Assembly (NCBI GenBank): GCA_965649825.1
Contig: OZ287700.1
Coordinates: forward strand, 1,054,001 to 1,118,000
Source: Penicillus capitatus
Lineage: Eukaryota; Plantae; Chlorophyta
Reading direction: 5' to 3'
DNA: 64,000 nt
Position numbers and translations under genes: made by a program. Under the pieces are notes generated by a model. The model was given only the letters and a program-made list of their open reading frames with translations. It searched no databases and had not been told where the DNA came from. Positions 1,714 through 60,943 of this stretch are shown here, piece after piece (position 1 is the stretch's first letter; every line of letters begins with the position of its first letter).

Positions 1714-1791
1714 CTTGCACGGGGCAGATCTGGGATACGATGAAGGGTGATGACATCTTTGATGTGACGTTTCTGCCATCACTGTACCGTC

Positions 1792-28680: not shown

Positions 28681-29007
28681 TCTCCATTCATGAGAGAGAC
28701 GGAGACCATGCTCATGCATCTACTGTCTGCTGAACATCTTATCTGCTTTAAGATAGATGGATGACTTTACTTCCATCACACTTCCTTCTCTGAGGAAGCG
28801 CTGTCACATCACGGCATGTCTTCATTGAGCAACGATGGCGATTGCGGTCGACGTCATCGACAGAGATCTAACGTCACGTCTGATCTGACAGCTTGCCAAA
28901 TCGAGATCTCGCCAGACGATAAATTGCGTTTCCCTCGCCTTTGTTTGCCATTTCACATTTGACTCCCAGCTTTCTATTCTCTCTGTTCTCTTCGACGGTC
29001 CAACATT

Positions 29008-29902
29008 ATGTCGGCAATGAGCACCAAGACGTCACCCCTGTCCGTCAAAGCCCCATCCGCCTCGCGCGTCAGAATCCCCTTCAAGGGTGGCCGGGTGCGA
29101 CCCTTTTAGTAATACGTCATGCATGCATCGAACAACGAGATGCGCTATCACAGGATGCCAGTCAGGTGACGCGTGCCGCTGCTGAATTCTACGGACCGAA
29201 CCGCGTCTTGTGGCTCGGACCTTTCTCTGAGGGAACCGTCCCGCCTTACCTCACCGGTGAATTCCCCGGCGACTATGGATGGGACACAGCCGGTCTCTCC
29301 GCTGACCCTCAGACGTTCGCCAAATACCGCGAACTTGAAGTCATCCACGCTCGCTGGGCGATGCTGGGAACACTTGGGTGCTTGACCCCTGAGCTTCTCA
29401 GCAGATACGGCGGTGTTCAGTTTGGCGAATCCGTCTGGTTCAAAGCCGGTTCGCAGATTTTCGCCAAGGGAGGTCTGGACTACCTCGGCAACCCTTCGCT
29501 CGTCCACGCTCAGTCCATCCTGGCCATCCTCGGTTGCCAAGTGCGACATGATCCTTGTGATCCGCGCGTGTCCACGTGTGCGTGGCGTAGGTCGTCTTGA
29601 TGGGACTGGCTGAGGCCTACCGTGTAAATGGCGGTCCTCTCGGCGAGGGACTCGACTCTCTCTACCCCGGCGAAGCTTTTGACCCACTCGGTCTTGCCGA
29701 CGATCCCGATACCTTTGCTGAATTGAAGATCAAAGAGATCAAGAACGGAAGGCTCGCCATGTTCTCTATGTTTGGATACTTCGTCCAGGCCATTGTTACC
29801 GGAAAGGGGCCAGTCGAGAACTGGGCTGACCATATTGCCGATCCCGTCAACGTCAATGGCTTGACTGCCGTCTTTGCGACGAAGTACGACCCTTCTGCCT
29901 AA
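29008..29902 (+). CDS. LHCBM: Major light-harvesting chlorophyll a/b-binding protein (LHCII)
   Basis: [72 protein letters not shown]. Confidence 0.97.
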
Positions 29903-30973: not shown

Positions 30974-31143
30974 ATGAATGATGCATCCATAGTCTACAGT
31001 TGTCACAGCTTAATGACAGATGGTTTTATTGTAACGCGTGTTTTTGGCAAAACAAACATCTTTATAAAATGGACCGTCTTTGGTCGAACGTTACTCGTGG
31101 CTCAAGATCCGATTCGTCCAAATCGCGCCCGGCAGAAATTGTG

Positions 31144-32238
31144 ATGGACCCCCGGGAACACGAACCGAAGACGGAAGCCGGCGGCCTTGTCCTCGGATGC
31201 CTGGTTCCGGACTTCGTGGCGGAAACGACGCAGCGGAGGATTGAGTGGCACAGATGGATTGGTAGGCCATCCTTACGCTCTGAACCCACTTGCAGCCTTT
31301 CCGAAACGCAGGCGACAGTTGGGCATTGCTCCTGGGATATCCTTTCGATTTCCATCCGATTGCTGCCACAGAACTGGCACAGTTAGCAAAACTGCGCGGC
31401 GATCTTCGACACAGGTTCCCTCAACACACACGATGACTGCTGGCAACGCATCTCTGTATCTGTCCAGGCAGATAAAGGTGGCGGTCGTGTCGGACAACAC
31501 TGTGGAAGAGCACGAAGTGCCACTCGAGCCCATCGTGAAATGATGTGACGTTTGTATGTGTAGAAATTTGTACGTGACGTTGAATCGATGGAGATAACAG
31601 GCGGCTCTCCGATCGACTTCCCACTGATTTCGGATCCCGAACGGACAGTGGTCGAGACGTATGGGATGTTGGATGCCAATGTCAAATCCCCGACCGATGA
31701 TTTGCCGATCTGCTGTCGAGCACTGTTTCTTATTGGCCCCGACAAGAGACTCAAATTCTCTATGCTCTATCCGACAAAGACGGGACGGAATTTGAATGAA
31801 GTGCTGAGAGTCTTCGATTCCATTCAATGCAACGAAACACACGAGTGCATCCATCTATGCGTCGATGGGTCTTTGATGTGACGTTTCTAGAGTGCTGACG
31901 CCTGTGAACTGGGCGCCTGGTGATCCGGTCGTGATCAATCCTTATCTCGATGAGTCCGCCGCGCATGAGAAACATGGAAAGATCCGGACGATTACGTTGC
32001 CGTCTGGTATGAAGTACCTAAGATACGTGGTACGTCACATCATGCCTGCCATCACGATTTCTCCATGACGGACACGATCCTGTTGCATCAGGCGGATCCA
32101 ACAGGTCCTCCCAAATCGTCGAATTCGTGGGGTGGATTTTTTAAGACGGTCTTGGGAGTGAGTTTCGGCATCGTGATCGGTGCCGTCGGCGGAAAAGTCG
32201 TCAAGCCGCTAAAAGAGAAGTCCACATCTTCTCTCTAG
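31144..32238 (+). CDS. Prx6/1-Cys peroxiredoxin-like protein lacking the peroxidatic Cys, with a C-terminal TM tail
   Basis: G.LVPDF.AETT, GDSWALL, DFHPIAATEL (canonical DFTPVCTTEL), RALFLIGPDKRLK, YPTKTGRN, TPVNW.PGD, LPSGMKYLRY, then an extra last exon. Confidence 0.88.
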
Positions 32239-32412
32239 ATGGATATGGTCCATGACCTCATAAACCAACCCAAAATGCAGAGACTAGTCATTTCTCTGGG
32301 TCAAGAAGCCAGAAATGCCTCAGTGGAGCGGATTTTGAGAGAATTGTATTCATTGTTCGCACGACCGAGAATAAACATGATGTGACGTTTATATCCGCGC
32401 TGTGACGAGAGC

Positions 32413-33944: not shown

Positions 33945-36900
33945 TCAAGCAAACGTCGTCATTTGCACGCCGGCGTCGTTCGCGATTTTGATAAAGACTT
34001 CTTCGAGCGTCGCATTTGAGACTCCCCAATCGAGGATGTCGATCTCGGCGTCGTTCTTGAGCTGCTCCATGTAAGCGAACACGTCCTGTAGCTGAACTGC
34101 CTCTGTTGGCAGTTCGAATTTCTGCGTGCCGCCCAAGGAGTAGACGGGACGTGCCGTCCGGCAGAATGTATAGATCGCCGAGGCCGTCTTTTCCTCTTGT
34201 CCGCTGGCAGACGTAATAGAAAACTGCAGATAACTCCCGTACCGAGCCGTGAGATCCTGGCCGATAAGCAACGTCAAAGGAAGCGAGTGAATGAATGCAC
34301 GCGCCTTTGGATTGCCGACGCAACGCAGCTGTCCGCCCACAAAGATGCCGAGTCGATCGCAGAGAGCCTCGGCTTCTTCCATAGAATGCGTCGTCAGCAC
34401 AATCGCTGTATGCTTCTTCGCTTTCTTGATGACATCCCAGAGGAGTCGTCGAGACGATGGATCCAATCCAGTGCTCGGTTCGTCGAGATAAGCGACGAAC
34501 GGAACACCGATCAATGCGATCGCAACACTCAATCTCCGTTTCATACCACCACTGCGGCACATAAGATCAGCGACGGTGCAGATAGAAATGCCGAAACGTG
34601 CCTGTATGTGCGAACTTGTTTGTCGCCGATGGCGTCGTTCAAAAGATTGACGCTCTTCAACGAATCATACACAGCATTGGCCAACTGTTCCCCTTTCAGA
34701 TTTTTGAGTCGGCCATAGAACAATAGATGTTCCTGACCCGTGAGCGTCTCCCACAGTAAATCGTGCTGTGGACAGGCTCCCATAAAGGAATAGATGGCGG
34801 ACATGTCGCTTTGTGTATCGTAACCCGCGACGATAACCGACCCCGATGTCGGCTGGAGGAATCCCTCCATCATACGAATCGTTGTCGTCTTGCCAGCGCC
34901 ATTCGGACCCAAAAGACCGAAGCATTGCTGTCGACCGATGGCGAGCGAGAGATTGTTGACAGCGACTTTGGGATCGGCATGTCCTCTCCTCGGATAGACC
35001 TTTCTCAGATGGCGCAAGAGGATGGCGCCATCGCCCTCTGGATCCTCGTCTCCGAGCTCGAAGGATTCCCAAATCTGTTCGACGCGTGCGCGCTCGGCTG
35101 CGACATCGGCGGCGTCATCTTCGCAGTAAGCCCCACTGCGTCGCCGTCCAAGGGCCTCCATTGTTCGGCTCAGGTCATTCTAAACGCCCAGGAAAGAAAT
35201 CGACGTTCGTATCGACGATCGCCGGACACTTGCTTGTTCCATACCGTCTCGATCGACGGGTGAGACAACGGTCTCCAGTAATTCGGCGAGGCGCGATGAA
35301 GAGTCTTCCAGTATCTTGGGCGAACTATCGGATACTGGCAGTGTCGGCATGTTGCCAGCAGATCCCCAATAACTGCCTGTCGCCGTGTCGCTACCTTCGA
35401 TCGGCGTTCCGCCCACCACTCGTGGTATTCCTGTCGATGCCCTGAAAAGAGTCTGCGTCTAAATCGAGGCAACGGGAAGGAGATCGATGCCTAGACTGAG
35501 CGGAATGAACATCAACAGACTTAGAGCTTCGAGATCTCGTCGAGGATTTCGTTTCCTCCTTTGTCGCCACCGATCGTCGTCGCAGTTTACTTTCACGCAT
35601 CAACTCAGCATTCGACAGCGCACGATCCAAAGAGATCTCGGCGTTTTCCTCAGCGGATGCGAGCACCTTCTCTTTGCTCTTCTTTTTCTTTGCGTCATAG
35701 CTGCAGCCCAAAAAGAACAAGGGATGTCGACGCGTCCCTAATCCATTGTCAGACACCTGCGATCGGCCGATCGAACCGCATCGACGTCATCGCACCGATC
35801 GCCCCACCTGATCTTTGTACCAGGCCCCGATGAGAAATACGAACCATTCGATCGCGAAGATGATCAGGACGCGCTTCATGCCGTTCTTCTCATCGCCAAG
35901 TTTGCTCCACGTCAATCCGTCTCCCGAATTGTAGGACGCGAGAAACGCGTACTCGGCTAGTTCCCAGACGCCACGATAGAGACCGAAGGATGGCATGATT
36001 TGCATTCCATGTGCGATCCACGATGGACCGCGAATGACGAATGGACCCAGTAGAAACGAGCCCACGAATCCTGAACCAATGACCCAGACGATGGTTGTAT
36101 GAACAGCGGTTTTCTGATCTTTGAAGAGTGTCGCCATCCAAAATCCCCATGCAACCATCAACTGACCCCACACACCGTAGAATACCAACTAGACACGCAC
36201 AGGTGGGTCTTTGTGACCATCCGTCATGGCCCCACGCAATCGATGACCTGAAGACTCAGCTGGTTCTTAATGAAGACGCTGAGACCGAGCCACGATCCAG
36301 AGATCATGAAAACGGCGATAAAGCAGCAGTAGATAGAAACCTGCCATGTGTACGTTACAAAGTAATAGGCTCGATCGTCGAGTCCTTGCATCTTCATCAC
36401 GATGCGCAGTTGATGTTGCTTCTCATGCATCAGATGATGTACATGTACCTAGTAGACATCCACTGAGTGTCGGTGTTCGTGGATGGACGATCGCGGCATA
36501 CGGGAAGCAGCATCTGAAGAAGCCAGAGAAAGAAAACGGGTCCCAACAATGCCGAGAAATCGATGCTCAGACGCGTCTCCGGTTTTGGCATGCCACGCAG
36601 ACCGTACAGTCGCATATAGTACTCCGAATCCTACACAAATAGCCACCCGTTTTCTCAAGACATCGCGTCATCGCGATCGTTTACATTCATGTGGTGACGC
36701 AGAAAAGCATTGGCCGCGAGATTGAGAGGCTGATTGTGTCGTTGCAGTTCAGGTATCTGATCGAACTCGGTGTATCCTGTATCGTTCACCCGAATGTCCA
36801 CGAGAAAATGTCGATTTCGCGTCGATTTCCAATCGTAGATAGCACTGACATGCTCCTATCGAGCGACTCTATGATGCGCCAAGACGTCATGTGTCATCGA

Positions 36901-60040: not shown

Positions 60041-60943
60041 TCAGGTGATCGAGAAGATCTCTTCGAGCTTGCTCAGTTGTGCGGCGACGGAATTGAGTCC
60101 AGTCGTAACGATCATTGGTGAATCGACCCCTGCTAGATGCGAGGTCTCTGTACTCATAGGCACATTGTAGACGGCAATCGTATCCTGTCACAACACGCAA
60201 TGATGTGACGGATGTCTCACACATGTGTGTGCATTGTCTTTACTTTGAGCTTCCGGACTCGGCTCACCGAGATCGTGAAGGAATCCACGCAGCCGAACGG
60301 GCTCTGGTAGAAATGGAAGAAAGGTAGTGCCTGGAACGAGGCCGTGTGTGCATCATCGAGTGATGTGACGTGTGACTTGCCTTGACGCCCATAACTTGGC
60401 AGAGCTCCAAGTTCTCATCCCAGTCCACTTTCAGCAACAGAACGTCGGGATTCGCTCGACATATCTGACTCAACTACACCGCGATCGGTTCTCTCAGCAA
60501 CAGAACCATACAGTTCGGATCACGCACTTTAGGATAGAGCGCTCGACAGGATCGACACCACTTTGCGTAGAAATCGATGACCACCAACCGATTTCCCGCA
60601 CTTTGCTGCACAGCGATGCGCCGTTGATGTGACAGTCTGAGAGCAAGGAGGCTGAAGCTACCAGCGCATCGAGCATTTGCTCAGGAGAGTGGACCGTGAT
60701 CATGTTCGGTGCTGGATTTCGACTCCACCACGGTTCGGCACAGAGTATATCTTTTGCCAGGCCGAGGTCCATCGCAGCAGCTTTGAGCGGAACCATCGGT
60801 CGTCGTACTCTGAGAGATTTCCCCAGAAGCGTCTGGCGTCGCAAACGCAGACGTGCGCAACATGTTCGACGCGTTTCGAAAACAGAGCGACGCGGAGATG
60901 GCTGTGCTTTGAGTTCCTGTCCGAAAACGGTCTCCACGTTCAT
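60041..60943 (-). CDS. ACHT: Atypical Cys/His-rich (Lilium-type) chloroplast thioredoxin
   Basis: VVIDFYAKWCRSCRALYPK, LLLKVDWDENLELCQVMGVK|ALPFFHFY, transit-peptide-like N-terminus. Confidence 0.85.

What the first reader, a model, noticed from the sequence alone, without database searches (positions are those of the whole stretch)
31144..32238. Tail-anchored pseudo-peroxiredoxin: Prx6 fold without the peroxidatic Cys but with the PLA2-triad positions kept
Seen: the active-site motif reads DFHPIAATEL, with GCT (Ala) at 31362-31364 where Prx6 has DFTPVCTTEL. The upstream Thr is His, and SHP is GYP. The frame is otherwise intact and spliced, which does not look like a decaying pseudogene. The catalytic Arg is retained (31717), preceded by an unusual Cys-Cys pair. 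An extra exon (32092-32238) after the normal KYLRY end adds FFKTVLGVSFGIVIGAVGGKVVKPLKEK, a hydrophobic helix followed by basic residues. Established: human PRDX6 uses H26/S32/D140 for phospholipase A2 activity independently of C47; the equivalents are present here (His 31249, Ser in GDSW 31317, Asp in GPDK 31741). Inference: a membrane-tethered, non-peroxidase Prx6 acting as a lipase, scaffold or dominant-negative partner. Retaining the last intron would give a soluble isoform. These triad residues may also be kept for structural reasons alone.
Basis: partly seen in the sequence, partly recalled or inferred. Interest (0 to 1): 0.78.

Follow-up and report, generated by a model that had tools for sequence, protein, structure and literature searches.

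The report
Tail-anchored dead peroxiredoxin-6 of a green alga
This is a real, intact six-exon green-algal gene for a peroxiredoxin-6-fold protein that has lost its three peroxidase catalytic residues, carries a C-terminal membrane anchor, and is kept by purifying selection; it is a modestly novel pseudoenzyme whose role is unknown.

Summary
A six-exon gene (31069/31144-32238, +) encodes a Prx6-type protein with Ala (GCT 31362-31364) at the peroxidatic Cys, His at the catalytic Thr, Tyr at His39, and Arg132 kept. A last exon adds one 16-residue glycine-zipper hydrophobic helix and a basic end. The start is probably 75 nt upstream (ATG 31069).

An independent assembly of the same species gives an identical protein. 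A sister species keeps Ala with a different codon (GCC), all five introns and the tail; dN/dS is about 0.12. The clade is small and includes two Caulerpa paralogues. Cp reads A, A, S, D, and C once. Of 42 near-invariant Prx6 positions, only His39, Thr44 and Cys47 are changed in at least 5 of 6 members, which is a pseudoenzyme signature.

The lipase idea is not supported. The H/S/D triad is the commonest ancestral Prx6 state, and its Ser is replaced in three of six clade sequences (both Caulerpa paralogues and P0031). The intron-retention "soluble isoform" is not conserved.

C-terminal hydrophobic tails also occur on Cys-containing Prx6 of Pyramimonas, Mesostigma and a marine picoeukaryote. The anchor may therefore predate the catalytic loss, but the tails are not alignable.

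Verdict: new variant of a known kind, moderate interest.

The parts
31069..31261 (+). Exon 1. It encodes a 38-residue Ser/Arg/Lys-rich N-terminal extension and the first strands of the Prx domain. His61 (CAC 31249) is the equivalent of human H26.
   Evidence: The extension is 100% identical in L001 and L005 and is shared by P0001 and P0031. AF2 pLDDT is below 50 for residues 1-20 and 26-36.
31262..31311 (+). Intron 1 (50 nt, GT..AG)
   Evidence: It is 80% identical to L001, against 94.8% for exon 1.
31312..31414 (+). Exon 2: GDSWA motif (Ser AGT 31317) and the degenerate active-site loop GYPFDFHPIAATEL.
31338..31364 (+). The three replaced peroxidase residues: Tyr74 (31338-31340, human His39), His79 (31353-31355, human Thr44) and Ala82 (GCT 31362-31364, human Cys47).
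   Evidence: these are the only near-invariant Prx6 columns changed in at least 5 of 6 clade members; the Ala codon is GCT in the window and L004, and GCC in L001 and L005.
31415..31467 (+). Intron 2 (53 nt)
31468..31516 (+). Exon 3. The donor is GAA|GTGCCA at 31516/31517. The alternative donor at 31534 was rejected.
   Evidence: The 31534 donor has no GT in L001. Model A aligns better to PRDX6.
31517..31563 (+). Intron 3 (47 nt). It contains GATGTGACGTTT.
31564..31844 (+). Exon 4: core of the Trx fold. It holds Cys165-Cys166-Arg167 (TGC TGT CGA, 31711-31719), Asp175 (31741) and the YPxxTGRN motif.
31845..31890 (+). Intron 4 (46 nt). It contains GATGTGACGTTT just before the 3' splice site.
31891..32029 (+). 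Exon 5: 1-Cys Prx C-terminal domain, ending in KYLRYV.
   Evidence: (PF10417)
32030..32091 (+). Intron 5 (62 nt). It has an in-frame stop after 12 codons if retained.
   Evidence: It is only 64.5% identical to L001 and is 52 nt long there.
32092..32238 (+). Exon 6: linker ADPTGPPKSSNSWGGFFK, the hydrophobic helix, the basic C-terminal end and the TAG stop (32236-32238).
   Evidence: dN/dS of this segment is 0.24. In the intron-free contigs L002 and L003 it is contiguous with the Prx domain.
32146..32193 (+). Predicted transmembrane segment TVLGVSFGIVIGAVGG (residues 274-289), with GxxxGxxxG glycine-zipper spacing. It is followed by KVVKPLKEK.
   Evidence: The Kyte-Doolittle 19-residue mean is 1.85, against at most 0.96 elsewhere in the protein. 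Net charge after the segment is +2. The same pattern is seen in all six clade members.

Best explanation
The locus is a functional nuclear gene of a bryopsidalean (siphonous ulvophyte) green alga; the species was not identified, and Ostreobium is only a guess. It encodes a 303-aa pseudo-peroxiredoxin of the Prx6 (1-Cys Prx) subfamily.

Shown:
- The complete Prx6 fold is retained (thioredoxin-fold domain plus 1-Cys C-terminal domain), with nearly all family-invariant scaffold residues, including Arg132 and Arg155 (human numbering).
- The three residues that make a Prx6 a peroxidase are replaced: His39 to Tyr, Thr44 to His, Cys47 to Ala. Thiol-peroxidase chemistry at the canonical site is therefore impossible.
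- The same selective erosion is shared by a small clade: this species, a sister species, two species known from intron-free contigs, and two Caulerpa paralogues. The gene evolves under purifying selection.

Inferred:
- There is no signal peptide and no other hydrophobic segment. The short, Gly-rich, moderately hydrophobic C-terminal helix with a basic end should insert post-translationally as a tail anchor. The Prx domain would then face the cytosol on a non-ER organelle membrane (mitochondrial or plastid outer membrane, or peroxisome).
- The glycine zipper and the normally dimeric Prx6 fold suggest a membrane-bound dimer.
- The most likely mode of action is non-catalytic: a membrane-tethered binding, scaffold or holdase module.
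- It may derive from an ancestral tail-anchored but active Prx6, like the Cys-containing tailed forms in Pyramimonas, Mesostigma and a marine picoeukaryote. Because the tails are not alignable, this descent is only a possibility.
- One Caulerpa paralogue still has Cys and is sister to a paralogue with Asp. The peroxidatic Cys was therefore lost at least twice. His39 is replaced in all six members, so it was probably lost before the clade diversified.
For: - Gene model and residues.
- Family and fold: Pfam AhpC-TSA plus 1-cysPrx_C; PDB PRDX6 at 6.5e-52 and 3.6e-50; AF2 core pLDDT about 90, and Foldseek top hits 1prx, 2v2g and 5ykj with target TM-scores of 0.88-0.91.
- Not a sequencing error: L004, an independent assembly 99.5% identical in nucleotides, gives an identical protein with GCT. 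L001 and L005 (sister species, 86-87% identical in nucleotides, colinear) have GCC.
- Selection: 80 nucleotide but only 23 amino-acid differences; dN/dS 0.12-0.17 overall, 0.10 in the Prx domain and 0.24 in the tail. Exons are 86-95% identical and introns 64-85%. All splice sites are kept.
- Clade: P0001 to P0004 and P0031 share the N-terminal extension, the tail and a degenerate active site. No further members were found among 5.8e9 clusters or 1.84e9 representatives. NJ monophyly is 100/100 and the Caulerpa paralogues are sisters.
- Pseudoenzyme signature: of 42 near-invariant Prx6 columns, only H39 (6/6), T44 (5/6) and C47 (5/6) are changed in most members.
- Tail.
- Tailed Prx6 with Cp in other green algae.
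- The tail is part of the mature message in relatives: the intron-free contigs L002 and L003, with UTRs, read straight through all five junctions.
Against: - There is no RNA or protein data for this species. Splicing of intron 5 here is inferred from conservation and from relatives.
- I did not verify that L002 and L003 are RNA-derived.
- Membrane insertion and its target membrane are predictions. AF2 gives the tail low confidence (pLDDT below 50).
- Arg132, Arg155 and the TTE loop are retained, which could mean that some ligand or substrate is still bound and turned over.
- The tails of the other green-algal Prx6 are not alignable with this one, and the sister group of the clade is unresolved. 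Common origin of the anchor is therefore not shown.
- Nothing here tests what the protein binds.
Confidence: 0.62

Rival explanations
1. Membrane-bound lipid enzyme. The protein kept the PRDX6 side activities (acidic Ca-independent PLA2 through the H26/S32/D140 equivalents, or LPCAT through HxxxxD) and specialised in them after losing its peroxidase function.
For: His61, Ser67 and Asp175 are present, and HRWIGD fits HxxxxD. A membrane anchor would place the protein at a lipid substrate. Arg132 is retained.
Against: H-S-D is the commonest state in ordinary Prx6 representatives (32 of 124), and GDSWA is the commonest motif. Presence of the triad therefore reflects ancestry. Within the clade, Ser is Arg (P0031) or Asn (both Caulerpa paralogues), His is Pro in P0031, and the D of HxxxxD is Glu in P0004. 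A clade-wide function cannot rest on these residues. The strict GxSxG motif is not met.
Confidence: 0.12
2. Hetero-dimeric partner. The dead subunit pairs with an active, soluble Prx6 of the same cell. It either tethers that enzyme to a membrane or titrates it (dominant negative).
For: Prx6 proteins are obligate dimers (established knowledge; dimeric structures 1prx and 2v2g appear). The interface-bearing C-terminal domain is kept. Hetero-oligomerisation has been reported for Prx1/AhpC-type isoforms, according to the abstract of PMC13038412 (I did not read the paper).
Against: No canonical Prx6 of this organism was seen. The window holds only this copy, and the whole genome could not be searched. 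The conserved glycine-zipper TMD suggests homo-dimerisation. Hetero-oligomers have been shown for Prx1-type proteins, not for Prx6.
Confidence: 0.15
3. Still redox-active through another cysteine, for example Cys166 next to Arg167 or the Cys165-Cys166 pair.
For: A Cys directly before the catalytic Arg is present in 5 of 6 clade members. The CC pair is identical (TGC TGT) in all four genomic copies.
Against: The same Cys occurs in 18 of 119 ordinary Prx6 representatives that have a normal Cp, and P0004 has Ser there. Cys165 is confined to the window species and its sister species. The activating His39 and Thr44 are gone.
Confidence: 0.06
4. Non-functional relic: a young pseudogene or an assembly or annotation artefact.
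For: Catalytic residues are lost. There are no expression data for this species.
Against: The reading frame is intact, with five conserved introns, in four genomic copies from two species. dN/dS is 0.12. Within each species all differences are synonymous (3 and 4 sites). Homologues exist in Caulerpa and in intron-free contigs at about 55% identity.
Confidence: 0.03

Closest known systems
Peroxiredoxin 6 / 1-Cys peroxiredoxin (Prx6 subfamily; human PRDX6 1prx/5b6m, Arenicola PRDX6 2v2g, yeast Prx1 5ykj, P. aeruginosa LsfA)
   Same: The two-domain fold is the same (target TM-scores 0.88-0.92) at 36-41% identity. Nearly all subfamily-invariant scaffold residues are kept, including Arg132, Arg155, the TTE loop and YPxxTGRN.
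   Different: It lacks Cys47, Thr44 and His39. It carries a 38-aa N-terminal extension and a 47-aa C-terminal linker plus transmembrane helix. By sequence it cannot be a thiol peroxidase.
C-terminally tailed Prx6 of other green algae (Pyramimonas parkeae P0060/P0182; Mesostigma viride P0129; cluster P0066/P0183, named '1-Cys peroxiredoxin 6' by NCBI and abundant in Tara metagenomes)
   Same: A Prx6 domain is followed by a linker, one hydrophobic segment and a short charged end.
   Different: Pyramimonas and P0183 keep SHPxDFTPVC. The Mesostigma model is defective at its N-terminus. The tail sequences are not alignable with the window's tail. Phylogenetic linkage is weak (Pyramimonas is sister in 27% of bootstraps). 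My literature searches found no description of these tails.
Tail-anchored plant peroxidases, such as peroxisomal membrane ascorbate peroxidase APX3 (from established knowledge, not tested here)
   Same: A soluble antioxidant-enzyme fold faces the cytosol and is held by one C-terminal TMD followed by a basic cluster.
   Different: It is an unrelated fold (haem peroxidase), and those enzymes are catalytically active.
Sporadic Cys-less Prx6-like proteins (for example fungal P0113 from Jackrogersella, annotated 'mitochondrial peroxiredoxin PRX1', with Ser at Cp; P0143 from Lasiosphaeria)
   Same: Prx6 fold with Cp replaced. This applies to 11 of 119 representatives outside the clade.
   Different: These mostly keep Thr44 and His39, have no tail, and are scattered rather than forming a conserved clade with coordinated loss of all three catalytic residues.

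Membership tests
Prx6 (1-Cys peroxiredoxin) subfamily, by homology and fold | AhpC-TSA thioredoxin-fold domain plus the 1-cysPrx_C domain | tested here: met
   PF00578 at 2.5e-18 (66.6 bits, cutoff 26) and PF10417 at 2.5e-06 (27.8 bits, cutoff 21.1). Best PDB matches are all PRDX6 or 1-Cys Prx.
Prx6 (1-Cys peroxiredoxin) subfamily, as an enzyme | PxxxT/SxxC active-site motif with the peroxidatic Cys | tested here: not met
   The motif reads PFDFHPIA: Thr is replaced by His and Cys by Ala. This was confirmed in three further genomic copies.
Prx6 (1-Cys peroxiredoxin) subfamily, as an enzyme | Conserved catalytic Arg (human R132) and, for Prx6, His39 | tested here: inconclusive
   Arg is kept in 6 of 6 clade members. 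His39 is replaced in 6 of 6, by Tyr or Gln.
Prx6 (1-Cys peroxiredoxin) subfamily, as an enzyme | Peroxidase activity | not testable with these tools
   Needs an assay on recombinant protein.
PRDX6-type aiPLA2 | Ser32 in a GxSxG lipase motif, with His26 and Asp140 | tested here: inconclusive
   H, S and D are present, but the motif is GDSWA. The same state is the commonest in ordinary Prx6 representatives (32 of 124).
PRDX6-type aiPLA2 | Triad conserved among orthologues, as expected for a catalytic function | tested here: not met
   Ser is Arg in P0031 and Asn in P0003 and P0004. His is Pro in P0031.
Tail-anchored membrane proteins | A single hydrophobic segment within about 30 residues of the C-terminus | tested here: met
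   Residues 274-289 of 303. The Kyte-Doolittle 19-residue mean is 1.85. The feature is conserved in 6 of 6 members.
Tail-anchored membrane proteins | No signal peptide or other TMD | tested here: met
   The best 19-residue window elsewhere scores 0.96. The N-terminus is hydrophilic. This is a hydropathy check only; no dedicated predictor was available.
Tail-anchored membrane proteins | Post-translational insertion with the N-terminal domain cytosolic | not testable with these tools
   Needs localisation and protease-protection experiments.
Pseudoenzymes | Loss of catalytic residues with retention of fold under purifying selection | tested here: met
   (selective loss of H39, T44 and C47). (dN/dS 0.12). 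(fold).

The most novel reading that the evidence does not exclude
Siphonous green algae (Bryopsidales) converted an ancestral tail-anchored Prx6 into a membrane-tethered protein with a genuinely new, non-peroxidase activity. That activity would use the retained Arg132/Arg155 pocket, for example binding or sensing of an oxidised-lipid or anionic ligand at an organelle surface. It could be linked to the wound and oxidative biology of giant coenocytic cells, or to an endolithic lifestyle. This would be the first characterised pseudo-peroxiredoxin clade.
Probability: 0.25. Interest if true: 0.65.

Novelty: new variant of a known kind. Interest (0 to 1): 0.45.

Why it matters
Peroxiredoxins are usually defined by their peroxidatic cysteine, so Cys-less relatives tend to be left out of family classifications.

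Here a conserved clade has lost exactly the three peroxidase residues. It keeps the rest of the fold, a membrane anchor and strong purifying selection. That is a clean natural case for asking what a Prx6 scaffold does without redox chemistry, such as chaperone, adaptor or ligand-binding roles that are debated for active Prx6.

In passing, Cys-containing Prx6 with C-terminal hydrophobic tails were found in several green-algal lineages. I found no description of these tails in the literature. If real, they point to a membrane-bound Prx6 pool in algae, some of which (prasinophytes) are reported to lack catalase (bioRxiv 10.1101/2020.07.21.211367).

The impact is modest. It refines knowledge of a well-known family and does not open a new system.

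Tried and rejected
1. Alternative exon-3 donor at 31534 (adds VPLEPI). Rejected: the sister genome has no GT there, and the shorter model aligns better to PRDX6.
2. ATG 31144 as the start. Disfavoured against ATG 31069.
3. Sequencing error at 31362. Rejected using L004 (GCT) and L001/L005 (GCC).
4. Pseudogene. Rejected (dN/dS, intact frames).
5. Conserved soluble isoform by intron-5 retention. Rejected.
6. GPI-anchor signal instead of a tail anchor. Rejected because there is no N-terminal signal peptide.
7. More clade members. A profile search of 1.84e9 representatives and a profile word-search of 5.8e9 clusters found none beyond P0001 to P0004 and P0031 and the genomic fragments.
8. Placing the clade. 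An NJ tree with 100 bootstraps gave clade monophyly of 100, but the sister group is unresolved (P0074 47, P0104 45, Pyramimonas 27). A first attempt with Biopython distances timed out.
9. Literature. Searches on tail-anchored, pseudoenzyme, membrane-anchored and green-algal 1-Cys Prx, and on Ostreobium, found no prior description.
10. A canonical Prx6 from the same organism. P0205 proved to be an unrelated, animal-like sequence from another sample.
11. AF2 gave no confident model of the tail.
12. Species identity was not established. Ostreobium is only a guess. It rests on the Caulerpa affinity, a window GC of about 50% against 52.4% reported for Ostreobium, and the metagenomic sources.

Full report
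**Observation**

- ATG at 31144; exons 31144-31261, 31312-31414, 31468-31516, 31564-31844, 31891-32029 and 32092-32238.
- Five GT..AG introns of 50, 53, 47, 46 and 62 nt.
- The product reads ...GDSWALLLGYPFDFHPIAATEL..., with GCT (Ala) at 31362-31364.
- ...LPICCRALFLIGPDKR... has Arg at 31717 and Asp at 31741.
- The protein ends ...KYLRYV|ADPTGPPKSSNSWGGFFKTVLGVSFGIVIGAVGGKVVKPLKEKSTSSL*.

Homology is unambiguous.
- Pfam AhpC-TSA at 2.5e-18 and 1-cysPrx_C at 2.5e-06.
- Best solved structures are Arenicola PRDX6 (2v2g, 6.5e-52) and human PRDX6 (1prx/5b6m, 3.6e-50).
- An AlphaFold2 model has a core pLDDT of about 90. It superposes on 1prx, 2v2g, 5ykj and 7kuu with target-normalised TM-scores of 0.88-0.92.

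**Corrections to the model**

An in-frame ATG at 31069 (AAAATGG) adds MDRLWSNVTRGSRSDSSKSRPAEIV.
- This extension is 100% identical in the sister genome.
- P0001 and P0031 start with it (MDRLWSSV...). In L002 an in-frame TAA lies directly upstream of that ATG.
- The protein is therefore probably 303 aa, with a 38-residue hydrophilic, probably disordered N-terminal extension (pLDDT below 50 for residues 1-20 and 26-36).

A second possible donor for exon 3 (31534) is not conserved and was rejected.

**Is it real and under selection?**

The window is colinear with three contigs from public metagenome assemblies.
- L004 (ERZ25074695) is 99.5% identical in nucleotides over the aligned gene region.
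- L001 and L005 (ERZ26696514) are 86-87% identical.
- All carry the same neighbours: an LHCII gene upstream, then an M20 peptidase and an ABCA-type transporter downstream.

The coding sequence compares as follows.
- L004 encodes an identical protein, with 3 synonymous differences.
- L001 and L005 differ from the window at 80 nucleotide but only 23 amino-acid positions.
- They keep all five introns, all splice sites, the Cys-Cys-Arg triplet and the tail. They encode Ala82 with GCC instead of GCT.

dN/dS is 0.12 (NG86) to 0.17 (ML). By segment it is 0.10 in the Prx domain and 0.24 in the tail exon. Exons are 86-95% identical and introns 64-85%.

**Relatives**

The large protein collection holds only four close full-length relatives, at 52-56% identity.
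- P0001 and P0002/P0031 lie on contigs of about 1 kb (L002 and L003) with UTRs and none of the five introns. These look like cDNA, although I did not verify the sample type.
- P0003 and P0004 are from Caulerpa lentillifera in EukProt.

All share the N-terminal extension, the linker DP[ST]G..KS..SWGG, a Gly-zipper hydrophobic segment and a basic end. Profile searches of 1.84e9 representatives and of 5.8e9 clusters found no further members; the next best hits drop from above 530 to 255 bits.

The active-site decapeptides are:
- window and sister species: DFHPIAATEL
- P0001: DFNPVSTTEL
- P0031: DFNPVATTEL
- Caulerpa P0003: DFAPVCTTEL
- Caulerpa P0004: SFTPVDTTEL

In an NJ tree the clade is monophyletic in 100 of 100 bootstraps, and the two Caulerpa paralogues are sisters. 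The Cys was therefore still present in the clade's ancestor and was lost at least twice. The Ser codon TCC in P0001 is a plausible intermediate between TGC (Cys) and GCN (Ala).

**Pseudoenzyme signature**

I compared the six clade members with 124 other Prx6-like sequences. Forty-two columns are at least 85% conserved in the others. The only ones changed in at least five of six clade members are human His39 (6/6, to Tyr or Gln), Thr44 (5/6) and Cys47 (5/6). These are the peroxidase active-site residues. His39 and Arg132 flank Cys47 in the 1prx structure (established knowledge).

Arg132, Arg155, the TTE loop, W33, D105, YPxxTGRN, E159, R162, TPxxW and R219 are kept in all six. This is selective erosion of catalysis with retention of the fold.

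**The PLA2 idea**

The window does have His61, Ser67 and Asp175. However:
- H-S-D is the single commonest state among ordinary Prx6 representatives (32 of 124).
- GDSWA is the commonest pentapeptide at that site.
- Within the clade, Ser is Arg in P0031 and Asn in both Caulerpa proteins, and His is Pro in P0031.

Presence of the triad here is ancestral retention. A function common to the clade cannot depend on it.

For the 'unusual CC pair', the Cys next to the Arg is found in 18 of 119 ordinary Prx6 representatives and in Arenicola PRDX6. Only Cys165 is specific to this species and its sister species.

**The tail**

Residues 274-289 (TVLGVSFGIVIGAVGG, 32146-32193) form the only hydrophobic stretch.
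- The Kyte-Doolittle 19-residue mean is 1.85, against at most 0.96 elsewhere in the protein.
- The segment has GxxxGxxxG spacing and is followed by a +2 to +4 end in all six members.
- With no signal peptide, this is tail-anchor topology.
- A short, moderately hydrophobic TMD with a basic C-terminal end is typical of outer mitochondrial, plastid-envelope or peroxisomal tail-anchored proteins rather than ER ones. This is an inference from established knowledge and was not tested.

The intron-retention 'soluble isoform' exists only in this species. In the sister species, retention gives 66 out-of-frame residues.

**Context in green algae**

Among the profile hits, several Prx6 with a normal SHPxDFTPVC site also carry a C-terminal hydrophobic tail.
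- Pyramimonas parkeae (P0060/P0182).
- A 41-member cluster that NCBI names '1-Cys peroxiredoxin 6' (P0066/P0183). It is abundant in Tara metagenomes and sits in compact loci with no intron in the gene, between LETM1 and UbiA genes.
- Mesostigma viride (P0129), although that model's N-terminus is defective.

The tails are not alignable with the window's, and the tree does not resolve the relationship. A single origin of the anchor is therefore possible but unproven. Cys-less Prx6-like proteins also occur sporadically elsewhere (11 of 119 representatives, for example two fungal proteins).

**Mechanism**

Shown: the protein cannot be a canonical peroxidase, and it is conserved.

Inferred: it is a tail-anchored, probably dimeric, cytosol-facing Prx6 scaffold that acts non-catalytically (binding, adaptor or holdase). 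It may derive from an active tail-anchored Prx6.

Rivals, with my confidence in each:
- lipid enzyme: 0.12
- hetero-dimeric partner of an active Prx6: 0.15
- alternative-Cys redox protein: 0.06
- relic: 0.03

**Novelty**

Full-text searches found no description of a tail-anchored Prx6, or of an algal pseudo-peroxiredoxin. The family, the fold and the general idea of pseudoenzymes are well known. I therefore rate this a new variant of a known kind, with moderate interest (0.45).

Noticed in passing
window 1761-1772, 31542-31553, 31875-31886, 32379-32390 (+); 60362-60373 with one mismatch: The 12-mer GATGTGACGTTT occurs four times exactly, always on the + strand. With up to one mismatch there are 5 matches, against 0.58 expected. 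Two copies sit 9-15 nt before the 3' splice sites of introns 3 and 4 of this gene and look like branch points (TGAC). The intron-4 copy is identical in the sister genome. A third copy lies between this gene's stop codon and the ATG of the downstream M20 peptidase ORF. It could be a branch-point or intron signal, or a TGACG-type regulatory element.
   Followed up: partly
window 28941-29902 (+), 32413-~33900 (+), 33945-36188 (-): The neighbouring genes are an LHCII-type chlorophyll a/b-binding protein, an M20 peptidase, and an ABCA-type ABC transporter on the minus strand. The order is conserved in L001, L004 and L005. The LHCII gene is consistent with a green alga; the named Caulerpa homologues give the taxonomic evidence.
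   Followed up: partly
L001 and L005 (both ENA ERZ26696514): Two long contigs of one metagenome assembly (0.70 and 1.68 Mb) carry the same locus. They differ by only 4 synonymous sites in this CDS. They may be haplotypes of a diploid alga or two co-occurring strains.
   Followed up: no
P0060/P0182 (Pyramimonas parkeae), P0129 (Mesostigma viride), P0066/P0183 (loci L007-L011): Cys-containing Prx6 proteins with a C-terminal hydrophobic tail occur in other green-algal lineages. P0183 is listed in 463 index blocks of marine metagenomes, always between a LETM1 gene and a UbiA gene. I found no description of these tails in the literature searched.
   Followed up: partly
one search hits P0032-P0056: Many top profile hits are 450-1200-aa proteins with two Prx6-like domains in tandem (two matched stretches each). 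I did not examine their origin, or whether both domains keep the Cys.
   Followed up: no
window 31069-31143: The N-terminal extension has dN = 0 and unusually low dS (0.12, against 0.35 in the Prx domain) between the two species. This hints at constraint at the nucleotide level, for example on translation initiation or a regulatory element.
   Followed up: no
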